Assembly (NCBI RefSeq): GCF_006345805.1
Contig: NC_043014.1
Span: 310,001-374,000, forward strand
Source: Octopus sinensis
Lineage: Eukaryota
DNA: 64,000 nt
Direction: 5' to 3'
This document shows, piece by piece, positions 15,447 through 63,997 of the stretch. Below the pieces are notes generated by a model, which saw nothing but the letters and a program-made list of their open reading frames with translations, ran no database searches and was not told the DNA's origin. How positions within the stretch are numbered: the first letter of the stretch is position 1; each line of letters opens with the position of its first letter. The translations under genes were made by a program, and so were the position numbers.

Positions 15447-15569
15447 AGGCTGATCTCAGGACATGGAAACTCATAGGGGAGATGATAAAGGATTCAGAGA
15501 GAAAAATACAATGCCTACAAAGACATCGATACATAAATACATGCATATATATATATATAATATATATAT

Positions 15570-15830
15570 ATCATCGTCGTTTAACGTCTGCTTTCCATGC
15601 TAGCATGGGTTGGGTGATTTGACTGAGGGTTGGCGAACCAGATGGCTGCACCAGGCTCCAATCTTGATTTGGCAGAGTTTCTACAGCTGGATGCCCTTCT
15701 TAGCGCCAATCACTTCGAGAGTGTAGTGGGTGCTTTTTATGTGCCACCATCATGGGGAGCCAGTCAGGTGGCTCTGGCAGCAACCCACACATAAATGAAT
15801 AGTGCTTATCGCATGCCACCAGTGCTGCTA
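15570..15830 (-). mobile_element. RTE 3'-tail repeat (SINE or 5'-truncated LINE); other copies ~5725, 19115, 25340, 33135, 38450, 40235, 42718, 45025, 46335, 50410, 59400
   Basis: Shared catcgtttaacgtc.gctttccatgct.gcatgggttgg…ctggatgcccttcctaatgccaacc core; adjoins RTE copies at 45350 and 46560. Confidence 0.75.
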
Positions 15831-22311: not shown

Positions 22312-22343
22312 ATGGATAGTCTGGATCAGGCCCTGGAATCAAG
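22312..22343 (+). CDS. USF: USF exon 1 (MDSLDQALES-S)
   Basis: ATG GAT AGT CTG GAT CAG GCC CTG GAA TCA AG|gtaagt; resembles USF N-termini (MDMLD..LD..S); phase-2 donor in a CpG-containing region. Confidence 0.78.
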
Positions 22344-30921: not shown

Positions 30922-31219
30922 GTTTCAAATTTTGGCACAAGGAGTAAGTCACTTACATCAACCCCAGTGCACAACTGGTACTTTTATTTTATCAACCCTG
31001 AAAAGATGAAAGGCAAAGTGAATCTCAGTGGAATTTGAAGACAGATGAAATGCCACTTGGCATTTTGTTTGTCTTTACGTTCTGAGTTCAAATTTCCCTG
31101 AGGTTGACTTTGCCTTTTATCTTTGCAGGGTTAATAAAAGCACCTGTTGAGCCCTGGAGTAAATGTAATTGACTTACCTGCTCCCCTGAAATTTTTGGCT
31201 TTGTGCCAAAATTTGAAAT
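30922..31219. mobile_element. Head-to-head inverted pair of OR/OK-like SINEs
   Basis: Minus copy 30922-31054, 4-nt spacer, plus copy 31059-31219. Confidence 0.8.
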
Positions 31220-31658
31220 CGAGTAATGGTGATAATAATCTGAATCAGATTTGCTTGTCAGTTGCTTGATCTTAACCAGTCTGTCCCTTGGTGGCTGACG
31301 ATATGTGCATCTCTGATCACGAGCAGAAGTAGTTGGGAAGCATCATAGCCATATGTTGAAAGGAATTCTTTGGGGTTTGGATAATTCACCTCTGGAAACA
31401 TGGGTGTTTCATTCATCATCCTTAAACAAATCTTATTCAGAGACCTTTTGAGCAAGATAGGCTACTCACCCTAAAGAAATTCTAACTGGGCCCACCTGCA
31501 AGATCATGCACTGTTTATCTTGATATGAAATCACTGTCACACACATATATGGTTGATGCATTTACCTGGTGTCCCCTTATCAGACAGGTAGTTGTGATGG
31601 GTATGTTGGGCTTTGTATATTTGTACCCCAGTGTCACTTTGGCATGCATTGCTCTCTC

Positions 31659-31690
<32 letters not shown>

Positions 31691-31700
31691 TAATAGTAAT

Positions 31701-31912
31701 AATTTCAAATTTTGGCACAAGGCCATCAATTTCAAAAAAGGAGTAAGTCGATTGCATCAACCCCAGTGTTCAACTGGTACTTACTTGATTGAACCTGAAA
31801 GGATGAAAGGCAAAGTTGACCTTGTTGGAATTTGAACTCAGAATGTAAAGATGGATGAAATACTGCTAAGCATTTTGCCGGTGCGCTAACGGTTCTGCCA
31901 GCTGGCCACCTT
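31701..31912 (-). mobile_element. tRNA-derived OR/OK-like SINE
   Basis: Family core preceded by an (AAT)n run. Confidence 0.8.
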
Positions 31913-39469: not shown

Positions 39470-39890
39470 GGTCCATTGTCATTTCTTCTTGTGAGACCCA
39501 ACATCCTGAGATAGGTCCTTACCACTTCATCCCATGGGTCTCCCTCTTCTGTGGGTCCCATCCACTTTCAGTGATCAGAACTTCTTTATGCAGCTGCCCT
39601 CATTCAGACGTATCACATGTCCAAACCAACATAGTCTTCTCTCTTGCATGCTACATTTGATTCCTCTTATGCCCAACTTTTCTCTCAATACATTTGCACT
39701 TTGTCGTACATGTGCACTGATGTTGCACATCCAGTGGAGTATATGTTTTCTGCATTCAGAGCCCATGTCCCCCTACCATGGAGTATAGCTGGTCTGCACA
39801 CAAGTATCATACAGTCTACCTTTCGCTCTGAGAGAGAGTCCTTTTGTTGCCAGCAGAGGCAATTTGCTCTCTGAACTTCCTCCATCCTCT
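39470..39890 (-). mobile_element. RTE LINE 3' fragment
   Basis: AILHGRGTWAL; WMCNISAHVRQSANVLREKLGIRGIKCSMQERRLCWFGHV. Confidence 0.85.
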
Positions 39891-39990
39891 ACTTATTCTA
39901 GAAACAATACTTTACAATATTTTATATATAAAGAGAGAGCGAGAGAGAGATGTATGCATAATAAAATGTTATTTCACTTGAATGTTTCAG

Positions 39991-40052
39991 CCAAGATAAA
40001 ACAAATGACTCCAATGGATCAGATGATGTTCAGCTGACAGGACATGCAGAAG
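39991..40052 (+). CDS. USF: USF exon 2 (S-QDKTNDSNGSDDVQLTGHAE-G)
   Basis: gaatgtttcag|C CAA GAT AAA...GAA G|gtattt; 62 nt, converts phase 2 to phase 1 exactly as needed to join exon 1 to exon 3; QDK resembles USF2 HDK. Confidence 0.72.
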
Positions 40053-41443
40053 GTATTTCTTCACTTTCTTGCCCTTTGATCTACCTTTTCTTATTGCCAC
40101 CTACACTTATCATACTTTCTTTTGTGCATCCCCCTTAATGTCTGTAGATGTGTGTGTGTGTGTATAATCATTGTTTAGTGTCCACTTCTCCATGCTTGCA
40201 TGGGTCAAATGTGTATTTGTATCTATATTAGTTGTGGCACATGCTGGTGACACGTAACTGGCACCCATGCTGTGACACATAAAAAGCACCTTTCGAGCGT
40301 TGGAGCTCACAGAGGCAAGGTGGCCAATGCTGGTGGCATATGTAAAGCATCTTTCATGTGTTGGGCCTCATAGGGGCAATGATGAATGACCGAGACCTTT
40401 GCCATGTTTGAGAAGACGACCCATCAAGCTAAGTAAAATCCTAGTCATGGCAGATACTGGTGTCACACAAATGACACCCATGTCAGTGGCACATAAAAGC
40501 ACCCATTACAGTCTCAGAGTGGTTGACTTTAGGAAGGGCATCCAGTTATAGTAACCATACCAAATCACACTGGAGTCTGGTGCAGTCTTCCAGCTTGCCA
40601 GCTCTGGTCAAACCGTCCAACCCATGCCAGCATGGACAGTGGGCATTAAATGATGATGATACACCCATGTATGTATATGCGTGTATAAATACACACACAC
40701 ACGCAGTATAAATACACAACACATGTATGTATATGTTTCTGTTGTAAACACCATAAATAGTGTTGTAGTTGTTTTACCAGTGTTCTTGCTTTTATTTCTA
40801 ATGGTTTATTGATAGCAGCAGAAACTAAAAGAGTTGTGGAGCTGGAAATTCCACCACCAACAGCCGCTATTCATGACAGCTGACCTAAAATGCATTCCTT
40901 TCATTGCTGGAATTTTCTAAAAGAACCCAAACATTATTCATATTGTTCAATAATTCTATAAAATATAGGATCAGATCAGGACGGAATTGCAGCCCTCTCC
41001 CTGTTTTATCATTTCAACCATTTCCAGTTGGTCTGAACACTTCTTTCTTCGCTAAACAGTTTTGTCTTGTGGTTTGTTCTCTGTCACAGTCAACAGCTTC
41101 TGTTGTCGCTGTTTTATAAAACAAATGACTGTTGGCATTGTCTGCAATAGAATCATATATGTGATTACTTGACTTGCTAAAAATAGCACCCAAATCCTTC
41201 TCCAACCACATGCTTCTATCTCAACAGAGATAGGATACATTGGATAATATATATTCTGGATAGCTGTAAAGAAGGAATGGTCATGGTTGGTATATCTTTG
41301 GTTATAGGATTAAGACTCACCTGGAACTAATTATCAACTGTAAACCCCTTCACACTTGGCTGCCTCTCAGCCAAAATATTAAGATATTTAACATTTGTTG
41401 TTAGTTAAAAATGGATCTTACATCAGTTTTAATAGTATGTGGA

Positions 41444-42129
41444 AGTATTTACTGACAAAACATGAAACTGGTTGAGTATTCCTTAGTCATTTGTATAATA
41501 TACCTCATGCTGTCAAATTGTTTAACCCTATAATGCCATGTCCCCAGTATACTGAGAACAGCCTGAATGAAATCTCTGCCAGATTCCCCTTAAATCTCTA
41601 ACGAACAACACACAGAGAAAAAGCAGATAAACTTCCCTGGAACCGACAACCGATCATGTTGCAGCTTTGTAGTGGAGTGTGTTGGAGATCCATTGTTAAC
41701 GATGTTCTCCATAGCTGTTGTTTACTTTGGTCTTTAATCGGAAAAAAAGGATCCTTTGTGAAGAAATACGGGTATGAGGAATCCAGTGCTTTGTCTGGTA
41801 AACAAACAGGGCCCAGACTCTTAGCAGTTGAAGAAATTATTGATGGTATTTATTCTTTGGGTGAAGAGTTTCCACTTCTGCAGACAATGAGAGTGATTCG
41901 GACAATGAAACTGGCGAAAGCGATGAGGAAAGTAACAATTCAGATGAACAAAGATGCTGCTTGAAAGATAGGCCTAGGGTTGTTAGGGTTCTGAACCATT
42001 TTTTTTTGTGATTCTGTCCATTAATTTGTTTGCAATTATTACTCTTGAGCTGTGTATGCAACTATTTATGATTTTGCTGAGGAGCCCCAGGTGGAGGGCA
42101 AAGTTGGACACAACGGCTGAGAGAGTTAA
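41444..42129 (+). mobile_element. Non-autonomous piggyBac-like element, copy 1 (core 41526-42125 between TTAA sites)
   Basis: TTAA|CCCTATAATGCCATGTCC … GGACACAACGGCTGAGAGAG|TTAA; acidic transposase-N-terminus-like remnant SADNESDSDNETGESDEESNNSDE. Confidence 0.65.
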
Positions 42130-42190: not shown

Positions 42191-43118
42191 CTGTGTTTAA
42201 CATCTGTAAATTTATATATTTTGCTTTTTCTTTGTTTATAGAAAAACAAACAACTAGAGTCCAGTAACAACAGAGATTGTTTTGTGTCAGCAGTAAAACT
42301 GTTACAAAGTCCATAAATAAGCCAAGTTTATGTTTTCTGACTAAAACAACCAGTTTAAATGCTTCTGATGAATATCTTCTTCAGAAAATTAATTTAATAT
42401 CTTTGTAATTAACTTATAAATTCTAGAAATGTCCATTTATGTTTATCGTTTCCCCATGTTGTTAGAAATACTGGGTGTGATGCTGCATGTTTAGGTATTT
42501 CTCCAGAAACTGTTATAGGTTTGGCGCTGGTCAGTGTCACCTGTTAACTGGCCATCTATCATTGGTTGTCATAGAAACTATTTCCTGCAAGAAGAGTTGG
42601 AACTAGCAATGTAATGTTTAGTCCAGGATCACAGCACAGTGGCAGTAGCAGGGTATGAACTGCTCAACCTCTGGTTGGTAGTCACACATGTACATCTGTA
42701 TACTCACACGCATACATATCATCATCATCGTCGTCATCAATTAACATCTGTTGTCCATGCTGGTATGAGTTGGACGGTTTGATCAAAGCTGGCATGCTGG
42801 GGATCTGCACTAGACTCCAGTCTGATTTGGTATGGTTTCTATGGCTGGATGCCCTTCCTAATGCCAACCACCCAGCAGAGTGTGCTGGGTGCTTTCACAT
42901 GGTACCACATGGGCTCTTTTGCTTGGCACTGTACCGGATGATGTATCAATCACACTAAAAATTGATGACAATATTGTTACTTAACTTTATTCAAGATTAT
43001 GATCATTGTTGCTGATGATGATGATGATGATGATCATCATCATCATTTCTGATGGCCAGAGGAACATGTTACATTGCTTTGTATGCATAATTAATTGACC
43101 CTAAACTTATTCTGGTAG

Positions 43119-43157: not shown

Positions 43158-44199
43158 GTGAGGTTTGATAATTCGGTAGCTGGAGACTATAGATAGCTGA
43201 CATGTTCAATTATCTTCTTTGATTTAGTATGAACTTGCCAAATTCACACTCCCTGACAGGTCAAGAGGTCATCAAGTTTTAAAATATGTGAATAGAGAGG
43301 AAAGCAAATTATTACTGTACCTCCACTATTCTAATCAATGGCAGGGAAATATGCATAAAGGTTAAAACAGAGAAAAGAGTGAGATGTGGGGTCTACTACA
43401 TGGATATTAAAAGTATGTAAAATTCTAAGTTAAATGTCAACTTCTATAATCCATTCAAGAAATATTAGGTCTACAGTTAAATTGAATTAATCGAATAAAA
43501 ATAGAGGCAGTAGTTTAGGATTAGATTAAAGATTAATCAAGTAGGGGTGAGAGAATCCATAAGAAGAGAACTTAGGTAAATTGTTTATTTAGGATTTTTA
43601 TGTGGAAAGTTTAGGAATATTTTATTAAATAAATGTGAACTGTGGCTTAAGAACTTGTGGTTCTTTGTAATTAAGTTGAATTTACCATTGAAAATTTCCA
43701 GCACCTCCATTGCCACCTGTATTAGGAAGAGCACTATCTACATGAAATGAAGTAGTCTGTATCCATTCTTAGAGATCCCAGGTGAACTTGGCCAATTAAG
43801 TGCAGTTTCCCTTTTGTATGGTTATGTTATCTAGTCTTGCACTTTGAAGTGGTAACACCTATGTAATAACACACACTCAGGTGTTTTGACCAAGCACTTA
43901 TATAAAAGATTATTCTTCAGATATTGGTTATCTAAAGGACATTTATCATGGTGCCTACAGTTACACATTCTATTCGGTATGTAGTCATAAGAGGCCTTAT
44001 TTACTGAGAGCTATGTGCTATACTGTAAACAACACCAGCTGCAGTATAGGTAGAAGTAGTTTCTGATAGAGGGTCTTACTGTCAATTAAGGCCCTCCATC
44101 AGCTTTTGCACCTTTAATGCAGTTTTATGTATGATTTATGTTTTCTGATAAATTCTCCATTTAACCATCTTTCATTTTGTCTTTGGTTCCTTCTGGCAG

Positions 44200-44345
44200 G
44201 AATGACTGGGTCATATGAGGTCGGAGATTGTTTCTCTGCAGGTCAGGTGACCTATCGTGTTGTACAGGTGACACAAGATGGTAGTGAAGCAACTGCTCAG
44301 GTAGTGTCTACCACAGGGTTTCCCGCTGGTGCTCAAGTTGCTCAG
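44200..44345 (+). CDS. USF: USF exon 3 (…GQVTYRVVQVTQDGSEATAQVVSTTGFPAGAQVAQ); 5' boundary 44200 or 44242
   Basis: Conserved GQVTYRVVQV motif; acceptors ttctggcag|44200 and tttctctgcag|44242 (both phase 1); donor CAG|gtgggt. Confidence 0.88.
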
Positions 44346-45025: not shown

Positions 45026-45349
45026 CATCATCATTTAATATCCGCTTTCCATGCTGGCATGGGTTGGACGGTTTGACATGAAACTGGCTTGCAGGGGGCT
45101 GTCCAGACCCCAACTCACTGTTGTGGCATGGTTTCTATGGCTGGTTCCCCTTCCTAATGCTAACCAATTAACAATGTATCAGTGCTGGGTATTTTTTACG
45201 TGCCACCCGCACTGGTACATTTTAAGTGTCAATGGCATCTGAAAAGACTAGCCTGTATGTGTGGATGACAGTGATTTTATTTAGCTTGACACTTCTCAAG
45301 TACAGCAAATTTCCACGTCTCCCAGTCCTTTGTCATTTCTTTAGTGAAG

Positions 45350-46235
45350 CTGAATATCCGAAAATCCTTTCTCATCACCTCATCCCACATCTTTCTGTGT
45401 CTACCCCTTCCACAATTAGAGCTCAGCACTTCTTTGCACAGCTGTCCTCATCCATACATACTGCATGACCAAACCAGCACACTCTTCTCTCTTGCACGCA
45501 ACATCTGAGGCTTCTTATACCCAGCTTTCCTCTTAAATCATTTACACTTTGTCGTGTGTGCACCCTGACATTACCCATCAAGTGGAGCATGCTAACTTCA
45601 TTTCTTTCAACCCTTCGCAGGTCCTCTGTAGTCAAAGCCCATGTTTCACTGTCACGTAACATAGTTGTACATACACAGACATCATACAATTTGCCTTTTA
45701 CTCTGAGGAAGTGGCCCTTACTTACCAACAAGGGTAGAAGCTCCCTGAACTTCGCCCATCCTGTTCTTATCCTGGTAGCTACACTTTCAGAAGAACTCCA
45801 CCACTGCTAACTTGGTCTCCTAGGTAACAGAAGCTATCTGCTACTTCTAATAATTTCCTGTCGTCTGTCCATTTCTAGTGCTTACTATAACACTCCACAT
45901 TTGCCACACACACAGAGACTATGTTTCCCATTAACCATCCCTTGACCTCTTATGTGTTCAAGGCTTCCACTGAGTACAATGTATGGAGTTTCTACCAACA
46001 CCCTTCTTACATATTGAACAGGGCCATCTCCCTGAAGGGACTTATGATTTGTCTGTTTTCCTACTTACTAGGACTTTGGTTTTTGCTAAATTAACTGTAA
46101 GACCCTTAATTCCAGACCTTGTTTCCACACCAGAAATTTCTTCTCTCGCTCAGTTTGTGATTCAGCTATAAGAACAAGGTCATCAGCAGAGAGGAGCTCC
46201 CAGACACAGCAGATCTTGAATTCCTCTAAGGCTTG
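45350..46235 (-). mobile_element. RTE LINE 3' half
   Basis: LRVKGKLYDVCVCTTMLRDSETWAL…RRVCWFGHAV. Confidence 0.88.
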
Positions 46236-46559: not shown

Positions 46560-47830
46560 AATGGCGTTGCAGTGTTGTATGAGATAGTTTTCTTCTTTCT
46601 AGCCTTTGCATGTCTACATTCACTGCTCAGGTTCACTACATGTAGTATTGCTATTTGTATGCAAGTATTATTCCATCTGTCTTTCATCTTCAGAGAGAGA
46701 GAGAGAGGTCTTTTGTTACCAACAGAGGTAAAAATTCTCTGAACTTTCCCCAACCAGTTTGTATTCTGGCAGCTATACTTTACGAATTAGGTTATCAAAA
46801 TAAGAGAAACCGTTTGCTGCCTTTAAGGATCCTCTTTAAGGGCATTCAACGAAACCTATTTTCCCTGTGTTCTTAGTGTTTATTACTCCTACACATCTGC
46901 CACTGACAAAGTCTACTTTCTCTGTTAACCTTCCAGTGATTCCACTCCACTTCTTGTGTGCCCGTACTTTGTATTGGGTACACTGTATGAAATTCCTACC
47001 AATATCTTTACTACATATTGAGCTGTGCCATTGTCCTGATCGATTAGGAGGCATATTACCTGTTTTCCTGTCTTCTAGCACTTAGGTATTTTATAAGTTA
47101 ACTTTAAGACCATTTGATTCCTGGCTGTGCTTCCACCCCTGGAATTTCTTTTCTAATTCTGCTACCATTTCAGCTATAATAACATAGTTATCAACATAAA
47201 CATGTTCTTACAGGTAATTGGTTTTAAACTCCTCTGTTATGGTCTGGAGGACAACGATAAACAAGATGGGGCTGAGAACTGAACCGTGGTGAAGTCATGC
47301 CAGCACACTAAATTCATTATTGCACTTTTTGCTAACTTTCACCTTTGTACATGGGTAATACAGCTCTAATCTGCCATTCATAGACTTCTAGCTTCCACAG
47401 CAAATGTCAGATCAAGGAGCAGAGGATTGTGTCAGAGGCTTTCTCCAGGTCGACAAAAGCCAAGTCCAGCAGCTTACTTTTGGTTAAATACTACTGTAAT
47501 TGCCTTGCTATAAAAAAAAGCACTGGTGATACTTCTCCCTGGTACAAAACCAAAGTGCATCTCAGCTAATCTTACTTTCTTCCTGAGTAGTTAATGGTAT
47601 AACTCTTTCTGTAATGTTCGTGGCCTGGTCCAGCAATTCAATTACTACTCTCTAAGACATCCCCTTTAATTTTGTAGCATTTGACTATAATGTTCCTGCT
47701 ACACAAGTTGTTGGATATGGTAACTCCCTGTACAACCTGACTAGGCCGTATCTCACTCTGCCAGACATTTCAAGCATCTCAGTGCTAATTCTTCTTGGAC
47801 CAGGAGATTTCAGTCTTCATGTCCTTAATC
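46560..47830 (-). mobile_element. RTE LINE fragment (RT region)
   Basis: CSICSKDIGRNFIQCTQ…; atgcactttggttttgtaccagg (MHFGFVPG) on the minus strand. Confidence 0.82.
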
Positions 47831-48227: not shown

Positions 48228-48396
48228 GCTGTTATTCAGACCCCTTTCAGTAACGGAGGAAGTCCAACACCTGAAAGCCAGACAGAAACAAGGTTTACAT
48301 ATTTCCCAACTTCTGGGTCGACAGGAGAAAGTGCAGTAGCATCACCAGCAGAGGTGCCAACTGCCACAGCAATTGGACCTGTCACTGCAGCTGGAG
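48228..48396 (+). CDS. USF: USF exon 4 (AVIQTPFSNGGSP…ETRFTYFP…AAG)
   Basis: ctctcaacag|169 nt|gtaagt; matches USF AVIQNPFSNGGSP..EARFAYFP. Confidence 0.95.
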
Positions 48397-49264
48397 GTAA
48401 GTCTCTCTCCCCCCACACACACAGCAACAAACATTGTGTGTTTGTATCTATTGTGGTGTATAGCAATCAAAATCTGTGGATTTCAATGAACCTAACTGCA
48501 AAACAAGCCCAAGCTGTAGTACTACTGTACTTCACAGGCAAGTAGGGATCAGTAGAAGGGACACACCTAAGTTTTGAAACACAATTGTTCAATGTGTTGC
48601 TCTTTTTGTGGATGCTTAACTTCCTTGAAATAGTAGCTAAATGTCTCTCAAATTACACAGTCCCACCTTAAAAAATGAATGACTGTGTTGGAGATGCAGT
48701 CCAAGATATATAAACAGACCAGCTGATGATGGCTGGAACACTTTCTGGTTTTTGAATAGAAAACTTCTTTATTATTATTATAATGCTTGATGACAGAGAG
48801 GAGTTGTCATTTTTCTGTGGCCCCTTTTTTTAGGGGCCTTGAAGATTAATGAAAGAAAGTTATCCTCAAGTCTGTTTCCAATAAACTCTGTTCAACACAA
48901 TCCTGACCGATTAGTGATGATGGAAACTATTCACCCTCGCAGCCTCTTATTAACGAACCATTTTTGTTCAAGGCATCAACTTCATTATAGCAAAGCGATT
49001 TTACTAAATCCTGCCGGACATGAAGGCAGTTTTTCTGACCAAAGTATTTCCATTTTGATTTTTGAATCATTTTCTAATGGCTGAGAATAAGAGGGACAAT
49101 GTTAACGATCTTATTTTAAGGTCTTCACTCGTTTGTGGCAAGGAGATCTAGCTTGAATTCTTGCGACAGTCTTTTTCCCTTTCATACCTTTTAGGTGACC
49201 ACTTCAACTGGTGTTCATTGGATTGAGTCCATTGTTTTTATTTATTGTTTTTCAACGTTTTTAG

Positions 49265-49399
49265 GTCAGTTCTATGTGATGATGTCTCCTCAGGATGTCC
49301 TTCAGAGCCAACGTAATATTGCTCCCCGAACAAACTACAGCCCTAAATTAGATGGCAGATCGACACGTGACGACCGTAGGCGAGCAACACACAATGAAG
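49265..49399 (+). CDS. USF: USF exon 5 (USR region and start of basic region)
   Basis: tttttag|GT CAG TTC TAT GTG ATG ATG…AAT GAA G|gtgcac; GQFYVMMSPQDVLQSQRNIAPRTNYSPKLDGRSTRDDRRRATHNE. Confidence 0.96.
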
Positions 49400-50746
49400 G
49401 TGCACTATTTCATTTATTTTTGTTTTAATTTGTTTACAGTTTTCTATAATAGATTTCTTCTAACTCACTCTCTATGTGAGTTAGGGGACAAAAGGGGAAA
49501 AGAAAATTTTAACTGGTGAATTTAGTGTAGCAGGAAAAAAGGCAACAAAGTATTGAGGGTTCAGTAGGAAGGTGAAGGGGTTATCCGTAGCTGCCACTCC
49601 AACCTGACCCCTAAGCATGGCTGGATCACACATTGACATTCTTGCTCTGTGGGCTTCCCTTAAGCACAGGTTAAATATATGAATATTTTTCAATTCAACA
49701 TGTTGAACATACGCAAATCAGTGCAGATGATGACGGCAAATATGGCAGCTGTCATAACTTCAAGTAGGCAACTGAGGTACGGAGTTGTAAAAGACATTTC
49801 TGTACTTATCATCATCATCATCATCATCATCATGTTGGGATGGGTTTGACTAAACTTATTGAAGCCGTATCCTACAACAAAATGTCCTTCTTCTTGTCAT
49901 CAAGCTTTGTTTCCAAGTATGGCATATATTCCACTGGTCTTTCTCAGGATAAACCGCTCAATGCCCAGATATGGTTTTGTGATGATGTAAATACAGACAA
50001 TGCCACATACCCAGTGGCATTGTCTGTTTCTGGTAAATAAAGAGAAAACCCTCTCAAACAGGTGTGTGTGTGGAATCTAGCAAGTGATAAATACATAATT
50101 CAAATCTTTTGGGTGAAATTTTTTTTCAATGTATAGTGTGTGTGTGTGTGTGTATATTGTTTTAGATTTATTTTTCGTGATGTTTGGGTGAATACAGTCA
50201 TTGTCTTACAACCGGATGCTCCTTTTGTCACTAACTTTTATGTTTTTCAAGTCAGGATTTTTTTTTCCCCACTCACCTTTGAAGGTAGAGATTCAAACCA
50301 CATTTCTGTTGGCTGGGAATATCAACAAATATTGCTAATGTTTTGGTTCATTGCTTTTTCATGCACAGAACATATTGTAAACATTCACACAAACCCACTT
50401 AGATGTGTGTATATCATCATCATTGTCTGTTTTCCATGCTGACATGGGTTGGATGCTTTGATGGGAGCCGGCAAGGCAGAGCACTACACTCAGCTTTGGC
50501 GTGGTCCCTACGACTTTGTGTCCTTTCTAACATTAACTACTTTACAGTGTACTGGGGATTTTTTTTTATGTGGCCCCAGCACAGTCACCAAGTAACTTCC
50601 AAAACAAAGGCTTCTCGACTGAGAGGTGGGGTACTGGGGAAGGTGGCTTTGTGCCAAGGCATACCCTCAAGATACCCAGCGGTGAGTGGAGTGATAAAGA
50701 GGATTGGACAGGATGAGTGAGTGGTGAACATAGATATAGAGAGGAG

Positions 50747-50784
<38 letters not shown>

Positions 50785-51210
50785 TATATATATACATACG
50801 CACACACATGTGTGTGTGTTTGTATACACAACAGGTTTCCATACAGTTTGTGTTTACCAATTTCACTCAGAAGGCATTAATTGGCCCCAGGCTACAGTAG
50901 AGGACACTTACCCAAGGCATCACACTGTGAGATTAAAACTTGACCATATGTAATGAAGCAAAGTCCATGTGTGTATGACTCAGAATGGCCACCACCCCAG
51001 GGCTGACACTGGTGGAAGTAAAAGAATGTTTATTATCTTAATACACTGAATGAAATGCACTTTGCCTAAAGGGATTCTGATACAATGACATTATCATGGT
51101 CAGGTTTACTCAGCTAAATGATATGCATTTAAAAATTGGATTGGGAATGGGGATGAAAGGGACTTTGCACATGAATTTAAAAACTTGTGTTTTCATTTTG
51201 TTGAGAGCAG

Positions 51211-51305
51211 TGGAGAGACGGCGGCGTGACAAAATCAACAATTGGATTGTTCATTTATCCAAGCTGGTCCCTGAATGTGCTCAAGACCATTCCAAACAAG
51301 GACAA
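51211..51305 (+). CDS. USF: USF exon 6 (basic region, helix 1, loop); alternative end at 51314
   Basis: gagagcag|TG GAG AGA CGG…GGA CAA|gttagt; VERRRRDKINNWIVHLSKLVPECAQDHSKQGQ. Confidence 0.96.
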
Positions 51306-51404
51306 GTTAGTGCAGTAAGTGTTTCTCATTTTCTTGTTTCTAAATCCTGTTCCATGATCCATCCACGGTTTCAACACTTCCGTCTCTTTACGTGTTTCTT
51401 TCAG

Positions 51405-51626
51405 AGCAAAGGTGGAATTCTGGCAAAAGCATGTGAATATATTCAAGAACTTCGGACGGCAAATGCTCGTATGGCTGACAGCCTTAAGGAGACAGAGCGG
51501 ATATCTGTTGACTGTGACTTACATCGACAACAGTGTGAAGAACTAAAACAAGAGAACTCTATACTACGTGCTACACTTCAACAGCATGGTATTGTCATCC
51601 CAGACCTGACAGGGAGTACATCGTGA
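51405..51626 (+). CDS. USF: USF exon 7 (helix 2, leucine zipper, stop)
   Basis: tttctttcag|[73 protein letters not shown]. Confidence 0.97.
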
Positions 51627-51739
51627 GGCAGGGACAGCTGTGTCTTCACTGTCACTCTCTTTTACACCTCTCAACAAAACTATCACCACCACCCCTCCCC
51701 TTCCTCCTCACCACAAATCTATCCAACATTATTATAATA

Positions 51740-51765
51740 TACACACATGCACATATACATACACA

Positions 51766-51815
<50 letters not shown>

Positions 51816-52262
51816 TACATACATATATATACACATATATACATACATATACACACACATATATATACATGTACATATATATACACATATATACATACAT
51901 ATACACACACATATATATACATGTACACATATATACATACATATACACACATACATAAATATATATATAGACATATACACACATATACATAAATATATAT
52001 ATAGATACATACACACACACACATATATATATATATACACACATATACATAAATATATATATAGACATATACACACATATACATAAATATATATATAGAC
52101 ATATACACACATACATAAATATATATATAGATACATACACACACACACATATATATACATACATACATACATATATATACATATGCATACATATATATGC
52201 ATATACATACATATATACACACATATATATATATATATATATACACATATTTATAAAATATA
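51740..52262. repeat. ~520-bp compound CA/TA minisatellite just after the USF stop
   Basis: Higher-order unit such as acatatacataaatatatatatagacatatacac. Confidence 0.95.
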
Positions 52263-52324
52263 TATTAAATAGTGCAATACAAAAGTATTGCTATCCATTA
52301 CAAGAAAGCACCACAAGGTTAAAG

Positions 52325-52822
52325 TATAAATATAGAATAGTGGTACAACAATGCACCAATATTTAATGGGAATAGCAGTTGATGCTGTACGCTGCTGTAG
52401 TAAAGCTTCACTGTGTGGGCAGCGACCAGAAAGAATTTCATCTTACCTGTAGGAAGAACATTAGTTAAATGTATAACCCAGATGTTAATCATTTTGGACC
52501 TGAGTTTCAGAACGTTTTCAGTGTTCTCGCTTGTTAACAGTTTAGGCGTTCAGGTGAGTCTACTGGCAGAGATGTAGCAACGTTCATAATTCTATGTGAA
52601 AACTCCAGCTGCAGAGAAATCATCAAGAGATTTTGAAACCTGGATCATCCACATCTGGGATGTATATTTATTTAATGATCTTCCGACAGGTAAGATGAAA
52701 TTTTCCGGAAACATATTTGCCCGTAAATACACAGTGAAGCTTTAACAATAGCGTCGTATATTGTTGACTGCTATTTCCAGTAATAAAATGGTGCGTTGTT
52801 GTACGACTATTCTATATTTATA
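52325..52822. mobile_element. Foldback element / long-TIR MITE downstream of the USF stop
   Basis: Arms 52325-52485 and 52651-52822 are imperfect reverse complements, with a 165-bp spacer and TA-rich ends. Confidence 0.75.
52782..52787 (+). terminator. Candidate distal USF polyadenylation signal AATAAA (proximal ATTAAA at 52264-52269)
   Basis: First AATAAA I found downstream of the USF stop codon, followed by a GT-rich tract. Confidence 0.4.
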
Positions 52823-53140
52823 TATATACACACACACATACATTCATATACGTACACATGTGTGTGTGTGTATGTGTATATATGTATATATATATATGCA
52901 CACATATCTATATACATGTGTGTGTGTATATATATATATATATACACACATATCTATATACATGTGTGTGTATATATATATATATATACGTGTATATATA
53001 CATGTGTATATATATATATTCGCTGGATGATATCCCACACCAAACACCGCCATTGTCGCCTAGTGTATATATATACACATACGCGCACACACACACACAC
53101 AGAAACACGTATGTATATATATTGATCTCTTGTTCCCCTC
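52815..53140. repeat. Compound TA/TG/CA microsatellite
   Basis: Direct reading. Confidence 0.9.
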
Positions 53141-53449
53141 TAATAACTGGGTTGGTTTGTCTTGTGCACATACATACACACACACACATTTGTTATTGTT
53201 AAAACTCTTGCAACTGGTAGGAGATTGTGGAATAGGATGCCTCCTGCTTCACATTCTGTTGGGGTTTACTTTGCCTTTCATGTTTCCAGGGTTGTTTAAA
53301 CAAGTACCAGTAATTCACTGGGTTCAACTCAATCAACTGTGCCCTTCCCTTCTACATATTGGCTCTTTGCCAACTCAAAAGAAACTTTATCATTATCTGG
53401 ACTCCTTGTAGCACTACTACTATTATCATCATCATCATCATCATCACTT

Positions 53450-54030
53450 TAGAGCAGTGGTTTGGCAGAATCAGTAGAGCACCAGACAAAATGCTTTATG
53501 GTATTTATTTATAGCTCTTTATGTTCTGAGTTCAAATCCAGCTGAGGTCAACTTTGCCTTTCACTTTTCATAGGGTTGATGAATAATGGTTGTGTGAACC
53601 ATTTGTTCCTTTCCCTTCACAATTATTGGTCTTCTGCCTAAATTAGGGAACTAATTATTTTCTTCATTAAGGCAGAACCATTAGCCAAATGCCTCATCGC
53701 ATTTCATCCGTTTTCATGTTCTGAGTTAATATTCCAAGGTCATCCTATTGGGGTCAATAAAATAAATACCAGTCACCTACTGGGGGTCACTATAGTTGGC
53801 TTGCCCCTCCCCTCAGAAACTGCTGGCCCTATGTCAAAATTTGTAACCATTATTATTATTATTTATTTAGGCAGAGAGCTGGCAACACCAGGCATTTTTT
53901 CCGGGTTTGCATTCTGAGTTCAGATGTCAAAGTTTCGGGGTCGATAAATTAAGTAGCAGTCATGTACTGGAGGTTCATGTAATCAACCTTCCTCTTAAAT
54001 GTTGCTGGCCTTGTGCCAAAATTTTGAAAG
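53450..54030 (+). mobile_element. Three tandem OR/OK-like SINE copies
   Basis: Repeated ttctgagtt… cores at ~53525, ~53718 and ~53913, each ending in a …aaattt(g) tail. Confidence 0.7.
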
Positions 54031-54469
54031 TTATTTTCATCATCAGCAGCAGCATCCTTACAGTGAAAATAATATAACCATTGATAATAATAATAATAAT
54101 AATACTGTTTTCTGAAATAACTTTGGATCAAGAGAAAGAAAATTTTCAAAATATAGCAGAAAATGTTTTGTTTTTGTACCTTCATCCCATGGCCCACTTC
54201 CTGGCAGTCAACAGGTTTTTTATGACAATAACTGATTTAGACCTTCTTCGTTTGCATATAAGTGCATGCAGTGTGTGTGTTGTGGGAGATGGAGGGTGCG
54301 TGTTTAGGAAGGCAATGAAGTGTCTTGGTAAATGATGCCTCTTCGCTTGTGTGTCATAAGAGTTTATGCTTCTGTAGAAACATTACATCTTGAAAGGATT
54401 GCATGGAAATATTGGGGAGCCTTTTCGTTTTTCTATCAAAAAGAAATTTTCAACTCAATATTTACTTGC

Positions 54470-54652
54470 TATTATATGTGTGTATATATATATGGATATG
54501 TGTGTGTATATATAGGTATATGTGTATCATCATTCATCATATATAATATACATATGTGTGTGTATATGTATGTATATATATATATATATATATACCCACA
54601 CACGGTTGTGTGTATGTATGTGTGTGTATATATATATATTATATAGTTGCGC

Positions 54653-54683
<31 letters not shown>

Positions 54684-54810
54684 CGGATGTATGTATGTAT
54701 ATATATATATATATATATATATGGATGTGTATGTGTGTATATATGGATGTGTGTGTATATATATATAGAGAGAGATGTATGTATGTGTGTATATATATTT
54801 ATATAGATAT
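54470..54810. repeat. Compound TG/TA microsatellite
   Basis: Direct reading. Confidence 0.95.
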
Positions 54811-54934
54811 GTGCTTTATTGAAACCCTAAATTAGTGTTTTAATGATTTCTGATATTTCCTCGTTAGTCTTTCATATTTAAGTCGGAGTAGTAATTAAGT
54901 AAATCCATAATAATGGCCATTTTTTCGACTGTAG

Positions 54935-55128
54935 ATGCAAGGCCCGAAATTTATGCGGGGTGGGCAATGGTAGTTGATTCTATTGACCCGAGTACTTGTC
55001 TGATACATGTTTCATTGACCCCAAAAGGATGAAAGGCAAAGTTGACCTTGGTGGAATTTGAACTCAAAACTTAAAGACGGATAAAATGCCATCAGGCATG
55101 CTAGTCGTTCTGCCAGTTCACTGCCTTG
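54935..55128 (-). mobile_element. tRNA-derived OR/OK-like SINE
   Basis: aggatgaaaggcaaagttgaccttggtggaatttgaactc. Confidence 0.8.
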
Positions 55129-55446
55129 TATTATTATGATAACAACAACAACAATATAACACGAACACGGTTGTTTCTAATATGACCATCATGCCAGCCT
55201 CCCTACTATGATAGAATAAAAACACAGCGTTGGATTAACAAACAATAAGTCTAGAGTAGAAAATAGCTGGAATTGAACCCTCACACATCGATTGTCTGAT
55301 GATGCCAATTTATTTGAGAGGGACAAGATGTGGTGTCCCCGTTCCTGCTGTACCCACCAGTGATTTATGAAAGGGGCTTGTTGCTATTTTTGTATTGTTG
55401 TTTATAAACCCATCCCAGTTAATATTGTTACATCTATATACATACA

Positions 55447-55492
<46 letters not shown>

Positions 55493-56697
55493 TGTATAAG
55501 CATCAATGTAGATGTGTTTATTCAAGCTGTTTGATTCTATACTCCATAGTCACTCTTACGTTGACGTGTAACAGTTTTTAATTCCATCAAAACCCTAAAC
55601 CTGCAACTTCTGCATATTTTGATGTCTGTATGTGATACGTGCATTCAATGGTGCACCAGTTTCTCTTTTGAAAGCCCTTGTACAGTTTTGTCCGGCTCCC
55701 CCCCCCCTGACACCACATATACACCCACCCGCACACACACCAACTCTGTTACAACCATGGAAGATTCCAGAAACATCATCCGAAGAAACTTCCCCTTCCC
55801 CCTCATCGGGTTTCTTTTTGATCTTATCTCACGGATGAGCAAGAAAACTGGAAACTTGTGATAATAGATATGTATATCTATATAATGTATGTGTGTGTGT
55901 ATACACGTATGTGTACACACACACACACATGTATATACACACGCATACATATATACACGTGTGTGTATACTCCCCAGCATCATCATCATCACCACCATCA
56001 TCATCATCAACAACAACAGCAGCAGGAAGTGAGTACAGTGATTTCTCCGATCCTCTCTTCCAACAATAAATTGACTTTTTCTCTGTTAACTTCTTCAATT
56101 CATCTTTTCTTCATTTTTATTTGTTAATTATTATTTCCTTATCATTTGTTGAATTTCTACCAATGTGTGTTTGTATATTAGATGGGGAAGCTCATTCGAT
56201 TGAGTTGGGATATTCTTTGTTGAATATCCCAAGTCATACAATTCCAAATCCATTTTATAAGAAGTGTAACGTCTGTGGTGACTTTGTCGAGTACTCTGCC
56301 AGGAAGCAGAGCTTATTTTGGCACAAGAGACGGGCGACCGATTGCAGTGTGTGCAAAAGTCAGGAAAAAGATGCACTCGTATATCAATAGAGTGGCTATA
56401 TTATCTGAAGTGTACAGTATCACACTAAGGATTCAAAACAGCTCAACTCTATGAGCCTACACTTCTCTGAGGTGGCTGTAATGGAATAAACTATGGCGAC
56501 TGTTCTCTATTGTTGGAGACACGAAGTTGATGTGAAAGATGATGGAACGAAATGAGTAAGAGCTTAAGAGTTATGTCCCTTGGTACTGAAACCTTATTCA
56601 TAGAAATGTCTGCAGCGATGGGCCGTGAGGTCACAAAGTTCACTTCTGGTTGAATCTCACTGTGTGATACTTTGGGCCAAAGTCTTCTACTTATAAC

Positions 56698-56813
56698 CAC
56701 CTCACCATATTTGCAAGGATTGGATGGGGCATTTCCACTTTCACAGTCCCTTTTTTCCCCTCCAATGGGTTTAGGGATTGTAGGGTCTGTTTCCATCACT
56801 TCATCCACATTTG
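56698..56813 (-). CDS. Candidate exon of an unidentified convergent gene (FRPNVDEVMETDPTIPKPIGGEKRDCESGNAPSNPCKY)
   Basis: Pyrimidine-rich acceptor ttttcttttctgtttatgcaaactgtcag|, open frame, donor ATG|gtgagg; no family recognised; coordinates approximate. Confidence 0.3.
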
Positions 56814-56859
56814 GACGAAATCTGACAGTTTGCATAAACAGAAAAGAAAACACAATATC

Positions 56860-57880
56860 TCATGTGAAAATCAAAAAAATATCGACTTGATTGTGGCTGA
56901 GCGTTAAAAACAATTTGCTTAAGATAGTCGGACTCAAGATGGCTCCAGAACCTGGTGCGTGCGTTCCTACTGTGTCCCTTGGAAAATCTTCAAACACCTC
57001 CTTCATCTTAGCCAACAGCTTAGCCTTGGTGTTGCAGGCAGACCGGCTAGTGTCTTTCTCAACTGTGCTCCACACAGTAATCCATGGGATTATAACCAAG
57101 GGGATTAAGAGGCCAGAAATTGCAGATGGTGAGTCAGAGAAATTCTCCAATAACCACCCCTTAATCTTTTTGGAGGTATGACAATGAACTGAATTCTGGC
57201 ACTCCACATGTAGCTGTCCAGCTGGGGTTTGACCACAGCTTCACAATTGAGCCTAAGGCCCTGATCTGAGATGTGATGTGGCATGATGTCACCCTCACTG
57301 GATACACTCACAGTTGGGGCTGACTTGGTTTTCATGATAAGCTGGACACCGTACGGATTGTAAGTCAGCTGCCCATTGTCCAGGCTGGTGTTGTGTGACT
57401 GATCCTGGCAGAAGTTCTTTTCGTCCTTGTAGAACCAGATCATCTCCACTGAACAGGATGCCTCGGCTTGTTCAGGAGCTTCCGCACCTTCGTCAAGTAG
57501 TCCTCCTTGGCCCTGGTTGTCAGAATTTGTGCCTCTTGTATTAGTGGTAGCAAAGATCCTCTTTCAGGGGCAGTTTCATATTGGCAACACCAATCTCTCT
57601 CACCAAAGCCCAGATTCCCTTGCTCAGATCTTCCATTACTTTGTCCTTCAGTTATCAAATGAAATCCAAAGTGCAGTCGGGGTCAGAATGCCTGCTCTGT
57701 CCCTTCCTGTTGGCCATGGACTTTGTAGTCTCCATTGCAGCTGTCCAGCTTCTACAGCGTTCACAGAGCATTGTGCAGCAGTTATGGTGTTGGTATTTTG
57801 AGATTCCATGTGCAAATCATCCGGATACAGAGAATTCTTTACCAATATTCAAATGGTTTCCAGTCCTCCATCTCAGATAA
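56860..57880 (-). mobile_element. Decayed maT/DD37D-type Tc1/mariner transposase
   Basis: WFYKDEKNFCQDQSHN…MKTK…SSEGDIMP…QGLRLN…VVKP; WLLENF; VWSTVEKDT…NTKAKL…KEVFEDFPRDTV. Confidence 0.8.
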
Positions 57881-59300: not shown

Positions 59301-59779
59301 CTGGCTGGTTTCCTCAACTTAACACTCCCCGATGCAAATGATCTGCAACACTAAGAACCTTGCTCTGTCTACAGCCTCCCTGTAAGTCACCACGAAGGTC
59401 ACTGTCATTTGTTGGCTGATGCCAGTGGAATGTAAAAAAGCACCACTCAAGGTAGTGACAGGGGACAGAGACCTTTGGCGATACGCCATGCATGTGTAGA
59501 CCCGTCAAACCAAGTGAGATCATAGTTGTGGCCGATGCCAGTGGCACGTAAAAAGCACCCACTATACTCTTGGAGTGGTTGGCATTAGGAAGGGCATCCA
59601 GCTGTGGAAACCTTGCCAAATCAGATTGGAACCTGGAGCGGCTCCCCAGCTTACCAGTTTTCAGTCAAACTGTCCAACCCATGCCAGCATGGAAAGTGGA
59701 CGGTAAACGATGGTGTTGTCTGCATAAATGCATCATAAAATCAGTCCTGATTAAGTAGCATTGGTAAAGATAAATGTTC

Positions 59780-63292: not shown

Positions 63293-63997
63293 TTAAACCT
63301 CTCAGCCCTCAGCCGTTGTGTCCAACTTTGCCCTCCACCTGGGGCTCCTCAGCAAAATCATAAATAGTTGCATACACAGCTCAAGAGTAATAATTGCAAA
63401 CAAATTAATGGACAGAATTACAAAAAGAAAAAAAAAAAAAAAAGGTTCAGAACCCTAACAACCCTAGGCCTATCTTTCAAGCAGCATCTTTGTTCATCTG
63501 AATTGTTACTTTCCTCATCGCTTTCGCCAGTTTCATTGTCCGAATCACTCTCATTGTCTGCAGAAGTGGAAACTCTTCACCCAAAGAATAAATACCATCA
63601 ATAATTTCTTCAACTGCTAAGAGTCTGGGCCCCGTTTGTTTACCAGACAAAGCACTGGATTCCTCATACCTGTGTTTCTTCACAAAGGATCCTTTTTTTC
63701 CGATTAAAGACCAAAGTAAACAACAGCTATGGAGAACATCGTTAACAATGGATCTCCAACACACTCCACTACAAAGCTGCAACATGATCGGTTGTCGGTT
63801 CCAGGGAAGTTTATCTGCTTTTTCTCTGTGTGTTGTTCGTTAGAGATTTAAGGGGAATCTGGCAGAGATTTCATTCAGGCTGTTCTCAGTATACTGGGGA
63901 CATGGCATTATAGGGTTAAACAATTTGACAGCATGAGGTATATTATACAAATGACTAAGGAATACTCAACCAGTTTCATGTTTTGTCAGTAAATACT
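63293..63997 (-). mobile_element. Non-autonomous piggyBac-like element, copy 2 (inverted)
   Basis: Reverse complement of 41444-42125 with only a few substitutions, a poly-T length change and a 7-bp CTCAGCC duplication. Confidence 0.65.

What the first reader, a model, noticed from the sequence alone, without database searches (positions are those of the whole stretch)
52264..52822. Long foldback in the likely USF 3' UTR, switchable by alternative polyadenylation
Seen: 52325-52485 and 52651-52822 are imperfect reverse complements (tataaatatagaatagt.gtacaacaa.gcacca, gtaaagcttcactgtgt, aatttcatcttacctgt.ggaaga.catta, cccagatgt all pair), with a 165-nt loop, ~700 nt after the stop. ATTAAA lies just before the hairpin (52264). 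AATAAA lies inside the 3' arm (52782) at a point where the 5' arm has diverged (ccaatatttaa versus the required ccattttatta), so the signal would be poorly paired. Known: long 3' UTR dsRNA is a substrate for ADAR, Staufen or Dicer, and coleoids edit heavily. Inference: proximal cleavage gives a hairpin-free USF mRNA, while distal cleavage ends the mRNA in a ~160-bp duplex; this could be a MITE-derived regulatory switch.
Basis: partly seen in the sequence, partly recalled or inferred. Interest (0 to 1): 0.72.

Follow-up and report, generated by a model that had tools for sequence, protein, structure and literature searches.

The report
Old decaying foldback downstream of octopus USF2
The long hairpin-forming inverted repeat 0.7 kb after the octopus USF2 stop codon is real. 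It evolves like neutral, decaying repeat DNA, not like a selected regulatory switch, so it is most likely an ordinary relic that at most makes a passive double-stranded RNA.

Summary
52325-52485 and 52651-52822 are inverted copies (132/159 ungapped positions identical, 3 indels) around a 165-nt spacer. As RNA they fold into a 144-bp imperfect stem (z = -17.4). The stem starts 699 nt after the USF2 stop codon. ATTAAA lies just before it and AATAAA lies in a weak spot of the 3' arm.

The window is Octopus sinensis CM016876.1:300001-364000. The element sits at the same site in O. vulgaris (2 differences) and O. bimaculoides, so it predates their split. Four results argue against selection on the structure:
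- It diverges faster than the neighbouring introns (13.1% against 8.4%, p = 0.002).
- None of 181 predicted pairs shows a compensatory change.
- The two arms had already diverged before speciation.
- The AATAAA is a derived sinensis/vulgaris feature; O. bimaculoides has AGTAAATAAT there.

The only AATAAA shared by all three species is 4.4 kb downstream, at 56065. A comparable foldback lies in USF2 intron 1.

Best reading: an old foldback or MITE-like relic. If transcribed, it would be a passive ADAR substrate. Whether USF2 mRNA reaches it, whether it is edited, and its genomic copy number could not be tested here. Low interest.

The parts
52325..52485 (+). 5' arm of the inverted repeat
   Evidence: Aligned to the reverse complement of 52651-52822 at 132/159 ungapped positions. 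Paired in the MFE and centroid structures. Orthologous arm in O. bimaculoides is 88% identical by substitutions. The O. sinensis/vulgaris copy carries a 22-nt deletion relative to O. bimaculoides.
52486..52650 (+). 165-nt spacer (loop), with only short local stems
   Evidence: It is 86.7% identical to O. bimaculoides, the same as the arms. A profile search finds no other copy in about 100 kb.
52651..52822 (+). 3' arm of the inverted repeat
   Evidence: It is 86.0% identical to the O. bimaculoides orthologue.
52264..52269 (+). ATTAAA hexamer, the first canonical poly(A) signal after the stop. It lies at the 3' edge of the upstream microsatellite, 56 nt before the hairpin.
   Evidence: Identical in O. 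vulgaris. Not alignable in O. bimaculoides, where the site falls in microsatellite and a 222-N assembly gap (L001 26066-26287).
52782..52787 (+). AATAAA hexamer in an internal loop of the 3' arm
   Evidence: O. bimaculoides has AGTAAATAAT instead: no AATAAA, only the variant AGTAAA. The four-arm alignment indicates that the O. sinensis state is derived.
51751..52265 (.). (TA/CA)n compound microsatellite between the proximal 3' flank of USF2 and the hairpin
   Evidence: Tandem Repeats Finder and the sequence itself.
52823..53019 (.). (TA/CA/TG)n microsatellite directly after the 3' arm
51405..51626 (+). Last coding exon of USF2 (leucine-zipper part), stop codon at 51624-51626
   Evidence: Translation and tblastn with mollusc and Octopus USF proteins. 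Exact protein identity with O. sinensis and O. vulgaris USF2.
56065..56070 (+). AATAAA conserved in all three Octopus species, 4.44 kb after the stop. It is a candidate distal poly(A) signal that would make the hairpin internal to a long 3' UTR (inference).
   Evidence: It is the only canonical hexamer between the stop and 58000 that is identical in O. bimaculoides. It lies in a block of 94-97% identity at 55300-56100. In the alignment only single-base or short indel differences occur within about 60 nt on either side.

Best explanation
This is an old foldback-type inverted repeat of 498 bp, with two arms of about 165 nt and a 165-nt spacer. It is most likely the relic of a non-autonomous DNA transposon (MITE/foldback-like) or of a local inverted duplication. 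It lies between two (TA/CA)n microsatellites 0.7 kb downstream of the USF2 stop codon of Octopus sinensis (CM016876.1:352325-352822).

It was already present, with already diverged arms, in the common ancestor of O. sinensis/vulgaris and O. bimaculoides. Since then it has decayed at or above the local neutral rate, and the pairing has not been maintained.

Mechanism (inferred, not shown): if RNA polymerase reads through it, the RNA folds into a 144-bp imperfect duplex with helices of at most 18 bp. Read-through is plausible because there is no canonical PAS before 52264 and the only conserved AATAAA is at 56065. Such a duplex would be edited promiscuously by ADAR, like the many hairpins reported in octopus introns and 3' UTRs. 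Any effect on USF2 mRNA is a passive by-product, not a selected poly(A) switch. The AATAAA inside the 3' arm is a recent, lineage-specific chance gain.
For: - Real, strong foldback.
- Same site in O. vulgaris (99.65% identical) and O. bimaculoides.
- Substitution identity between O. sinensis and O. bimaculoides: 5' arm 0.882, loop 0.867, 3' arm 0.860. Introns give 0.907-0.922, the proximal flank 0.936 and 53020-53500 gives 0.931. The element is significantly faster than the introns (p = 0.0018).
- 0 compensatory pairs of 181, covariation term +2.04. Of the stem pairs, 115 are unchanged, 16 changed on one side, 15 are broken and 0 are compensated.
- Orthologous arms are 85-86% identical and paralogous arms 76-77%. 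In 15 columns the two left arms agree with each other and the two right arms agree with each other (left differs from right in both species), against 2 columns with the opposite pattern. The arms therefore diverged before speciation and there was no concerted evolution.
- AATAAA at 52782 is not shared with O. bimaculoides and is derived.
- No Rfam family and no tRNA-like part.
- Similar foldbacks are not rare at this locus. One in USF2 intron 1 (31063-31858) has z = -12.4, and several other inverted pairs lie within 5 kb of each other.
- In O. vulgaris most A-to-I editing falls in introns and 3' UTRs, which the authors attribute to hairpins there (PMC9699675).
Against: - No transcript, editing or small-RNA data could be reached, so function is judged only from evolution across three species, two of which are nearly identical.
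- The element has kept both arms and a very stable fold in both lineages (O. bimaculoides MFE -251.7). Lineage-specific function needs no deep conservation.
- The arrangement ATTAAA-hairpin-AATAAA-in-a-bulge is suggestive, and O. bimaculoides keeps a variant hexamer (AGTAAA) at nearly the same place.
- Transposon origin is unproven. There is no second copy in about 100 kb, the TA/TA target-site duplication is uninformative in TA-rich flanks, and no empty site was found.
Confidence: 0.68

Rival explanations
1. This is the first reader's model, an alternative-polyadenylation (APA) switch. Cleavage after ATTAAA (52264) gives a hairpin-free USF2 mRNA. Cleavage after AATAAA (52782) gives an mRNA that ends in a duplex of about 160 bp, which is then edited, retained, bound by Staufen or diced. 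The choice is regulated and selected.
For: Both hexamers are present and are the first two canonical signals after the stop. The distal one sits in a weakly paired bulge followed by a GU/U-rich stretch. The same logic is established for CTN-RNA and for IRAlus controlled by APA (PMC11263572). MITEs in 3' UTRs can repress translation (PMC5338036).
Against: The distal AATAAA is lineage-specific and derived. The element evolves faster than the introns and shows no compensatory change. A deeply conserved AATAAA at 56065 suggests a different, longer 3' end. Usage of either site is unknown.
Confidence: 0.08
2. The hairpin is not part of any stable USF2 mRNA. Transcripts end upstream (for example at the weak AATATA at 51736, or at ATTAAA 52264), and the element is simply intergenic repeat DNA with no RNA-level role.
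For: The median O. vulgaris 3' UTR is only 350-380 nt (PMC9699675). The weak variant AATATA at 51736 is also present in O. bimaculoides. The evolution is neutral-like. A decapodiform USF transcript has a poly(A)-confirmed 3' UTR of about 0.67 kb (L009).
Against: There is no canonical PAS in the first 637 nt after the stop. Conserved blocks at 53000-53500 and 55300-56100, the latter with a conserved AATAAA, suggest functional sequence downstream. Another decapodiform USF contig carries at least 3.3 kb of 3' UTR (L002).
Confidence: 0.17
3. The foldback is a small-RNA locus (endo-siRNA or young miRNA-like hairpin) processed by Dicer, independent of USF2 protein output.
For: A long, stable hairpin. 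Octopods gained many new miRNAs (PMC9699675).
Against: There is no Rfam match in the hairpin. The arms are interrupted every 18 bp or less. The arm sequences are absent from the held supplements of the octopus miRNA study (files partly cut). The arms are neither conserved above background nor compensated. At 498 nt the element is far longer than a miRNA precursor.
Confidence: 0.04
4. It acts at the DNA level. The inverted repeat between two microsatellites extrudes as a cruciform and serves as a fragile site, recombination site or replication-pausing site, which would also explain its raised substitution rate.
For: Divergence is higher than in the flanks. The flanking microsatellites are unstable; the O. 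bimaculoides 5' tip has been overwritten by microsatellite and the assembly has a gap there.
Against: A 165-nt spacer and 83% arm identity strongly disfavour cruciform extrusion (general knowledge). The higher rate is equally expected for unconstrained repeat DNA next to mildly constrained UTR or intron sequence.
Confidence: 0.03

Closest known systems
Inverted-repeat SINE pairs in 3' UTRs: human IRAlus and mouse CTN-RNA (inverted B1 repeats), with inclusion set by alternative polyadenylation (review PMC11263572; Prasanth 2005 and Ku 2024 as cited there)
   Same: An intramolecular duplex of roughly 150-300 bp, imperfect (about 80-85% paired), located downstream of a stop codon. Poly(A) signals lie before and after or within it, so a short isoform could lack it. 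It is an expected ADAR or Staufen substrate.
   Different: The arms are not two independent insertions of a dispersed SINE. They form one compact 498-bp palindromic unit that is single-copy in the about 100 kb examined. No evidence for transcription, editing, nuclear retention or regulated APA was obtainable. The factors involved in cephalopods are unknown.
MITEs in 3' UTRs, for example the stowaway-like MITE in rice Ghd2 that represses translation through OsDCL3a (PMC5338036)
   Same: A small non-coding element with inverted ends that folds back, lies downstream of a coding region, and has TA dinucleotides at both borders.
   Different: MITE status is unproven: no further copies, no informative target-site duplication, no empty site. 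The arms (about 165 nt) make up two thirds of the element, which is more like foldback elements than typical MITEs with 10-40-nt TIRs. It is in an animal, not a plant, and there are no small-RNA data.
Promiscuously edited repeat hairpins in octopus introns and 3' UTRs (PMC9699675; metazoan hyper-editing of repeats, PMC5625713)
   Same: The same organism group, the same kind of structure and the same location class. It evolves neutrally, as expected for such by-product substrates.
   Different: Editing of this particular hairpin has not been shown.

Membership tests
MITE / foldback-type non-autonomous DNA transposon | Terminal inverted repeats at both ends | tested here: met
   The arms 52325-52485 and 52651-52822 pair from the very ends (52324:52823) inward.
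MITE / foldback-type non-autonomous DNA transposon | Small size and no coding capacity | tested here: met
   498 bp. The longest ORF is 57 aa, and none of the ORFs is in the protein collection.
MITE / foldback-type non-autonomous DNA transposon | Target-site duplication flanking the ends | tested here: inconclusive
   TA can be read on both sides, but the flanks are TA-rich or microsatellite, so this carries no information.
MITE / foldback-type non-autonomous DNA transposon | Multiple dispersed copies in the genome | tested here: inconclusive
   No second copy of arm or spacer was found in the 64-kb window or in the 36-kb O. bimaculoides locus, by blastn and by nhmmer profiles. No whole octopus genome is searchable with these tools. 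Two metagenome scans gave 0 hits.
MITE / foldback-type non-autonomous DNA transposon | Presence/absence polymorphism (an empty site in a relative) | tested here: not met
   The element is present at the orthologous site in O. sinensis, O. vulgaris and O. bimaculoides. Decapodiform USF 3' UTRs are unalignable.
3' UTR inverted-repeat dsRNA element with APA-controlled inclusion (IRAlu / CTN-RNA type) | Inverted repeat able to form a long intramolecular duplex | tested here: met
   144 pairs, z = -17.4.
3' UTR inverted-repeat dsRNA element with APA-controlled inclusion (IRAlu / CTN-RNA type) | Location inside the mature 3' UTR of at least one mRNA isoform | not testable with these tools
   No octopus transcript contig or UTR annotation could be retrieved. 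Only indirect hints exist: no canonical PAS before 52264, and a conserved AATAAA at 56065.
3' UTR inverted-repeat dsRNA element with APA-controlled inclusion (IRAlu / CTN-RNA type) | Poly(A) signals placed so that a short isoform skips the repeat | tested here: met
   ATTAAA at 52264 lies before the hairpin, and AATAAA at 52782 lies within the 3' arm. This is a sequence-level finding only; usage is unknown. The distal signal is not conserved in O. bimaculoides.
3' UTR inverted-repeat dsRNA element with APA-controlled inclusion (IRAlu / CTN-RNA type) | Clustered A-to-I editing of the arms | not testable with these tools
   No RNA reads are available.
Selected structured RNA / miRNA-like hairpin | Structure maintained by compensatory substitutions, or arms conserved above background | tested here: not met
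   0 of 181 pairs are compensated and the covariation term is +2.04. The arms are 86-88% identical against 91-92% for the introns.
Selected structured RNA / miRNA-like hairpin | Match to a described RNA family | tested here: not met
   The Rfam E-value scan of 50000-55000 gives only sub-threshold microsatellite hits (mir-297/466-like) outside the arms.

The most novel reading that the evidence does not exclude
In the O. sinensis/vulgaris lineage, a newly arisen AAUAAA in an internal loop of the 3' arm has created a structure-gated poly(A) site. Its use would depend on whether the 144-bp duplex forms or is loosened, for example by temperature, helicases or ADAR editing of the A-rich bulge. That would couple the choice of USF2 3' end to the dsRNA/editing state of the cell. 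It would be a young, species-specific regulatory gain that deep conservation tests cannot see.
Probability: 0.05. Interest if true: 0.6.

Novelty: new member of a known kind. Interest (0 to 1): 0.15.

Why it matters
If the hairpin is in the USF2 mRNA, it is one more example of a repeat-derived dsRNA in a cephalopod 3' UTR. It would be useful as a defined ADAR substrate next to a single-copy transcription-factor gene, but conceptually it is already covered by IRAlu/CTN-RNA biology. The comparative result is the informative part: a very stable 144-bp fold can persist across species purely by inheritance, with no sign of selection. A strong fold z-score plus well-placed AATAAA motifs should therefore not be read as regulation without transcript and covariation evidence.

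Tried and rejected
- Rfam scan of 50000-55000: only sub-threshold hits on microsatellites and nothing in the arms.
- ARAGORN on 52200-52900: no tRNA-like (SINE head) part. A near A-box (TAGAATAGTGG) in the arm tip is at chance level.
- Transcript route through the protein index. Ten start variants of the intron-spanning last-exon ORF and ten ORFs from the hairpin or downstream region are not in the collection. The exact USF2 protein occurs only on the two NCBI genome records. No octopus cDNA contig was therefore obtained.
- The first two homology searches missed the Octopus USF proteins. All hits were at most about 1.75 times the query length. Only a 275-aa spliced query found them.
- Decapodiform USF transcript contigs (L002-L005, L008-L015): their 3' UTRs share no significant similarity with the octopus downstream region, so they give no deeper conservation test.
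- Metagenome scans with a degenerate arm core and a conserved 23-mer of the spacer: 0 hits each.
- Held supplements of the octopus miRNA/3' UTR study: no USF entry, no stop-codon coordinate, no arm 12-mers. The isoform file (data S1) is not held.
- The O. vulgaris repeat-annotation paper holds no consensus library.
- GC/AT-skew profile, tried as a proxy for transcript extent: too noisy.
- My first impression that 56860-57449 (minus strand) is a mariner transposase remnant is not supported: no Pfam hit.

Full report
**1. What is there**

Positions 52325-52485 and 52651-52822 are imperfect reverse complements around a 165-nt spacer.
- A local alignment gives 132 identical of 159 ungapped positions (83%) plus three indels.
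- The repeat finder recovers the three best blocks on its own.
- RNA of 52300-52830 folds at -226.7 kcal/mol against -118.6 +/- 6.2 for shuffles. That is z = -17.4, and 0 of 100 shuffles fold as well.
- The long stem has 144 pairs, 15 of them G:U, in helices of at most 18 uninterrupted pairs.
- The unit sits between compound (TA/CA)n microsatellites at 51751-52265 and about 52823-53019.

**2. Context**

The upstream gene is USF.
- Exons lie at 22312-22341, about 39990-40048, 44199-44345, about 48228-48390, 49264-49398 and 51211-51314. The last coding exon is 51405-51626 with the stop at 51624-51626.
- The spliced 289-aa protein is identical to O. sinensis XP_029647500.1 and O. vulgaris CAI9737298.1, 'upstream stimulatory factor 2'.
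- The locus returned for that protein from GCA_006345805.1 (CM016876.1:312312-361626) is identical to window 12312-61626. The window is therefore O. sinensis CM016876.1:300001-364000.
- The 5' arm begins 699 nt after the stop.

On the plus strand there is no AATAAA or ATTAAA between the stop and 52263; only a weak AATATA lies at 51736. The canonical hexamers are:

| Position | Hexamer | Note |
|---|---|---|
| 52264 | ATTAAA | 56 nt before the hairpin |
| 52782 | AATAAA | in the 3' arm |
| 53756 / 53761 | AATAAA | not conserved in O. bimaculoides |
| 55215 | AATAAA | not conserved in O. bimaculoides |
| 56065 | AATAAA | conserved in all three species |
| 56485 | AATAAA | unaligned in O. bimaculoides |

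. In the ensemble, 52782-52785 pair with probability 0.5-0.6 and 52786-52788 are unpaired. Helices with pairing probability near 1 lie on both sides.

**3. Relatives**

The same element lies at the orthologous site in O. vulgaris (OX597833.1; L006 40362-40930; 2 differences in 569 nt) and in O. bimaculoides (CM046620.1; L001 26339-26876).

In O. bimaculoides the outer tip of the 5' arm has been overwritten by microsatellite, and the assembly has a 222-N gap just upstream. Its 5' arm keeps 22 nt that O. sinensis/vulgaris have lost. The element folds there too, at -251.7 kcal/mol.

Decapodiform USF transcript contigs from Logan have 3' UTRs of about 0.67 kb (poly(A)-confirmed, L009) and at least 3.3 kb (L002). 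They share no similarity with the octopus downstream region.

**4. Is the structure under selection?**

Substitution identity between O. sinensis and O. bimaculoides:

| Region | Identity |
|---|---|
| 5' arm | 0.882 |
| Spacer | 0.867 |
| 3' arm | 0.860 |
| Three intron segments | 0.907-0.922 |
| Proximal flank 51627-51735 | 0.936 |
| 53020-53500 | 0.931 |

- The element has 63 differences in 480 sites and the introns 214 in 2541 (Fisher p = 0.0018). It evolves faster than its surroundings.
- Of the O. sinensis long-stem pairs, 115 are unchanged in O. bimaculoides, 16 are kept through a one-sided change, 15 are broken and none is compensated.
- RNAalifold on the three species predicts 181 pairs, none with a double change, and a covariation term of +2.04.
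- In a four-way alignment of the arms, orthologous arms are 85-86% identical but the two arms of one species only 76-77%. In 15 columns the two left arms agree with each other and the two right arms agree with each other (left differs from right in both species), against 2 columns with the opposite pattern. The arms had therefore diverged before the species split, and neither concerted nor compensatory evolution has acted since. From Jukes-Cantor distances, the repeat is roughly 1.7 times as old as the split (my calculation).
- The AATAAA of the 3' arm is AGTAAATAAT in O. bimaculoides. The gap-free form is shared by three of the four arms, so the O. sinensis/vulgaris AATAAA is a derived gain. 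O. bimaculoides does keep the variant hexamer AGTAAA at the spot.

**5. Where might the mRNA end?**

This could not be tested directly. No octopus cDNA contig or UTR annotation was reachable.

Indirect evidence:
- The only canonical hexamer shared by all three species is AATAAA at 56065. It lies at the end of a block of 94-97% identity (55300-56100) and is nearly invariant for about 60 nt on either side.
- 53000-53500 is also 92-97% identical.

This pattern fits a long USF2 3' UTR of about 4.4 kb in which the hairpin is a poorly conserved internal passenger. That is inference only; the conserved block could belong to something else. In O. vulgaris the median 3' UTR is 350-380 nt, 71% of cleavage sites carry canonical signals, and most A-to-I editing lies in introns and 3' UTRs, which the authors attribute to hairpins there (PMC9699675).

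**6. Origin**

- Neither blastn nor nhmmer profiles of the arms and of the spacer find another copy in the window or in the O. bimaculoides locus, about 100 kb in total.
- Two metagenome scans found nothing.
- There is no Rfam or tRNA-like match.
- TA can be read at both borders, but that is uninformative in TA-rich DNA.
- No species in hand has an empty site.

The label 'MITE-derived' therefore remains a reasonable guess, not a finding. A local inverted duplication is equally possible.

Foldbacks are not unusual at this locus. USF2 intron 1 has another one with arms of about 150 nt (31063-31219 / 31702-31858, z = -12.4), built from a dispersed 170-185-nt repeat. Several more inverted pairs lie within 5 kb of each other.

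**7. Most likely mechanism**

Shown:
- a heritable, old, decaying inverted repeat with a very stable RNA fold;
- no selection detectable on sequence or pairing.

Inferred:
- when transcribed, as pre-mRNA read-through or as part of a long 3' UTR, it forms an imperfect 144-bp duplex;
- that duplex would be edited promiscuously by ADAR;
- any influence on USF2 is incidental.

Confidence is about 0.68. A further 0.17 goes to the closely related view that it is never in mature mRNA.

**8. Comparison with what is known**

If the switch did operate, it would work like mouse CTN-RNA and human IRAlus, whose inclusion is set by alternative polyadenylation (PMC11263572), or like MITEs in plant 3' UTRs (PMC5338036). 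It is therefore at most a new member of a known kind. It differs in being one compact palindromic unit rather than two SINE insertions, and in lacking any expression evidence.

**9. Verdict**

The feature is real and its function is probably nil or passive. Interest is 0.15.

The most novel reading still open is a young, structure-gated poly(A) site specific to O. sinensis/vulgaris (probability about 0.05).

A weak oddity remains. Among lineage-specific substitutions in the arms, plus-strand A>G outnumbers T>C by 11 to 3 (two-sided p = 0.057). This could reflect transcription-associated mutation asymmetry, but the numbers are too small to rely on.

Noticed in passing
window 55300-56100, hexamer at 56065-56070: A block of 94-97% identity between O. 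sinensis and O. bimaculoides ends just after an AATAAA that is invariant in all three Octopus species, 4.44 kb downstream of the USF2 stop. It is a candidate distal poly(A) site of a long USF2 3' UTR, or of an unannotated transcript.
   Followed up: partly
window 31063-31219 and 31702-31858 (USF2 intron 1): A second foldback with arms of about 150 nt and a 483-nt spacer (77% identity, RNA fold z = -12.4). It is built from a dispersed 170-185-nt repeat that also occurs at about 1680-1862, 15569-15756, 19115-19292, 40477-40674, 42731-42895, 45026-45206, 50397-50572 and 59541-59718. The repeat is probably a SINE.
   Followed up: partly
window 41444-42121 and 63308-63997: Two inverted copies of a 690-nt sequence at 97.5% identity, 21 kb apart. 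One lies in a USF2 intron and one downstream of the gene. This looks like a recently active repeat family.
   Followed up: no
window 4063-5408 and 6987-8359: A large inverted repeat with 1.4-kb arms (73% identity) and a 1.6-kb spacer, upstream of USF2. Related copies lie at about 39537-39904, 45410-46181 and 46633-47177.
   Followed up: no
window 56255-57400: About 1.1 kb present in O. sinensis but absent from the aligned O. bimaculoides locus (L001 31023-31278). ORFs on the minus strand (56491-57449) looked transposase-like by eye but have no Pfam match.
   Followed up: partly
window 51751-52265; L001 26066-26287: A 515-nt (TA/CA)n compound microsatellite lies directly after the proximal USF2 3' flank. 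The orthologous stretch in the O. bimaculoides chromosome assembly is an N gap, so the ATTAAA at 52264 cannot be compared.
   Followed up: yes
window 52325-52485 and 52651-52822 (arms), against L001: Among lineage-specific substitutions polarised with the four arms, plus-strand A>G (11) outnumbers T>C (3), two-sided binomial p = 0.057. This is a weak hint of transcription-associated strand asymmetry.
   Followed up: partly
window 51096-51626: The intron between the last two USF2 coding exons (about 51315-51404) is open in frame, so a mechanical 176-aa ORF spans it. Two alternative donors (after KQGQ, or after KQGQVSA) exist. The annotated Octopus proteins use the VSA form, and cuttlefish or squid transcripts use a longer one (VNAVSVQ).
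   Followed up: partly
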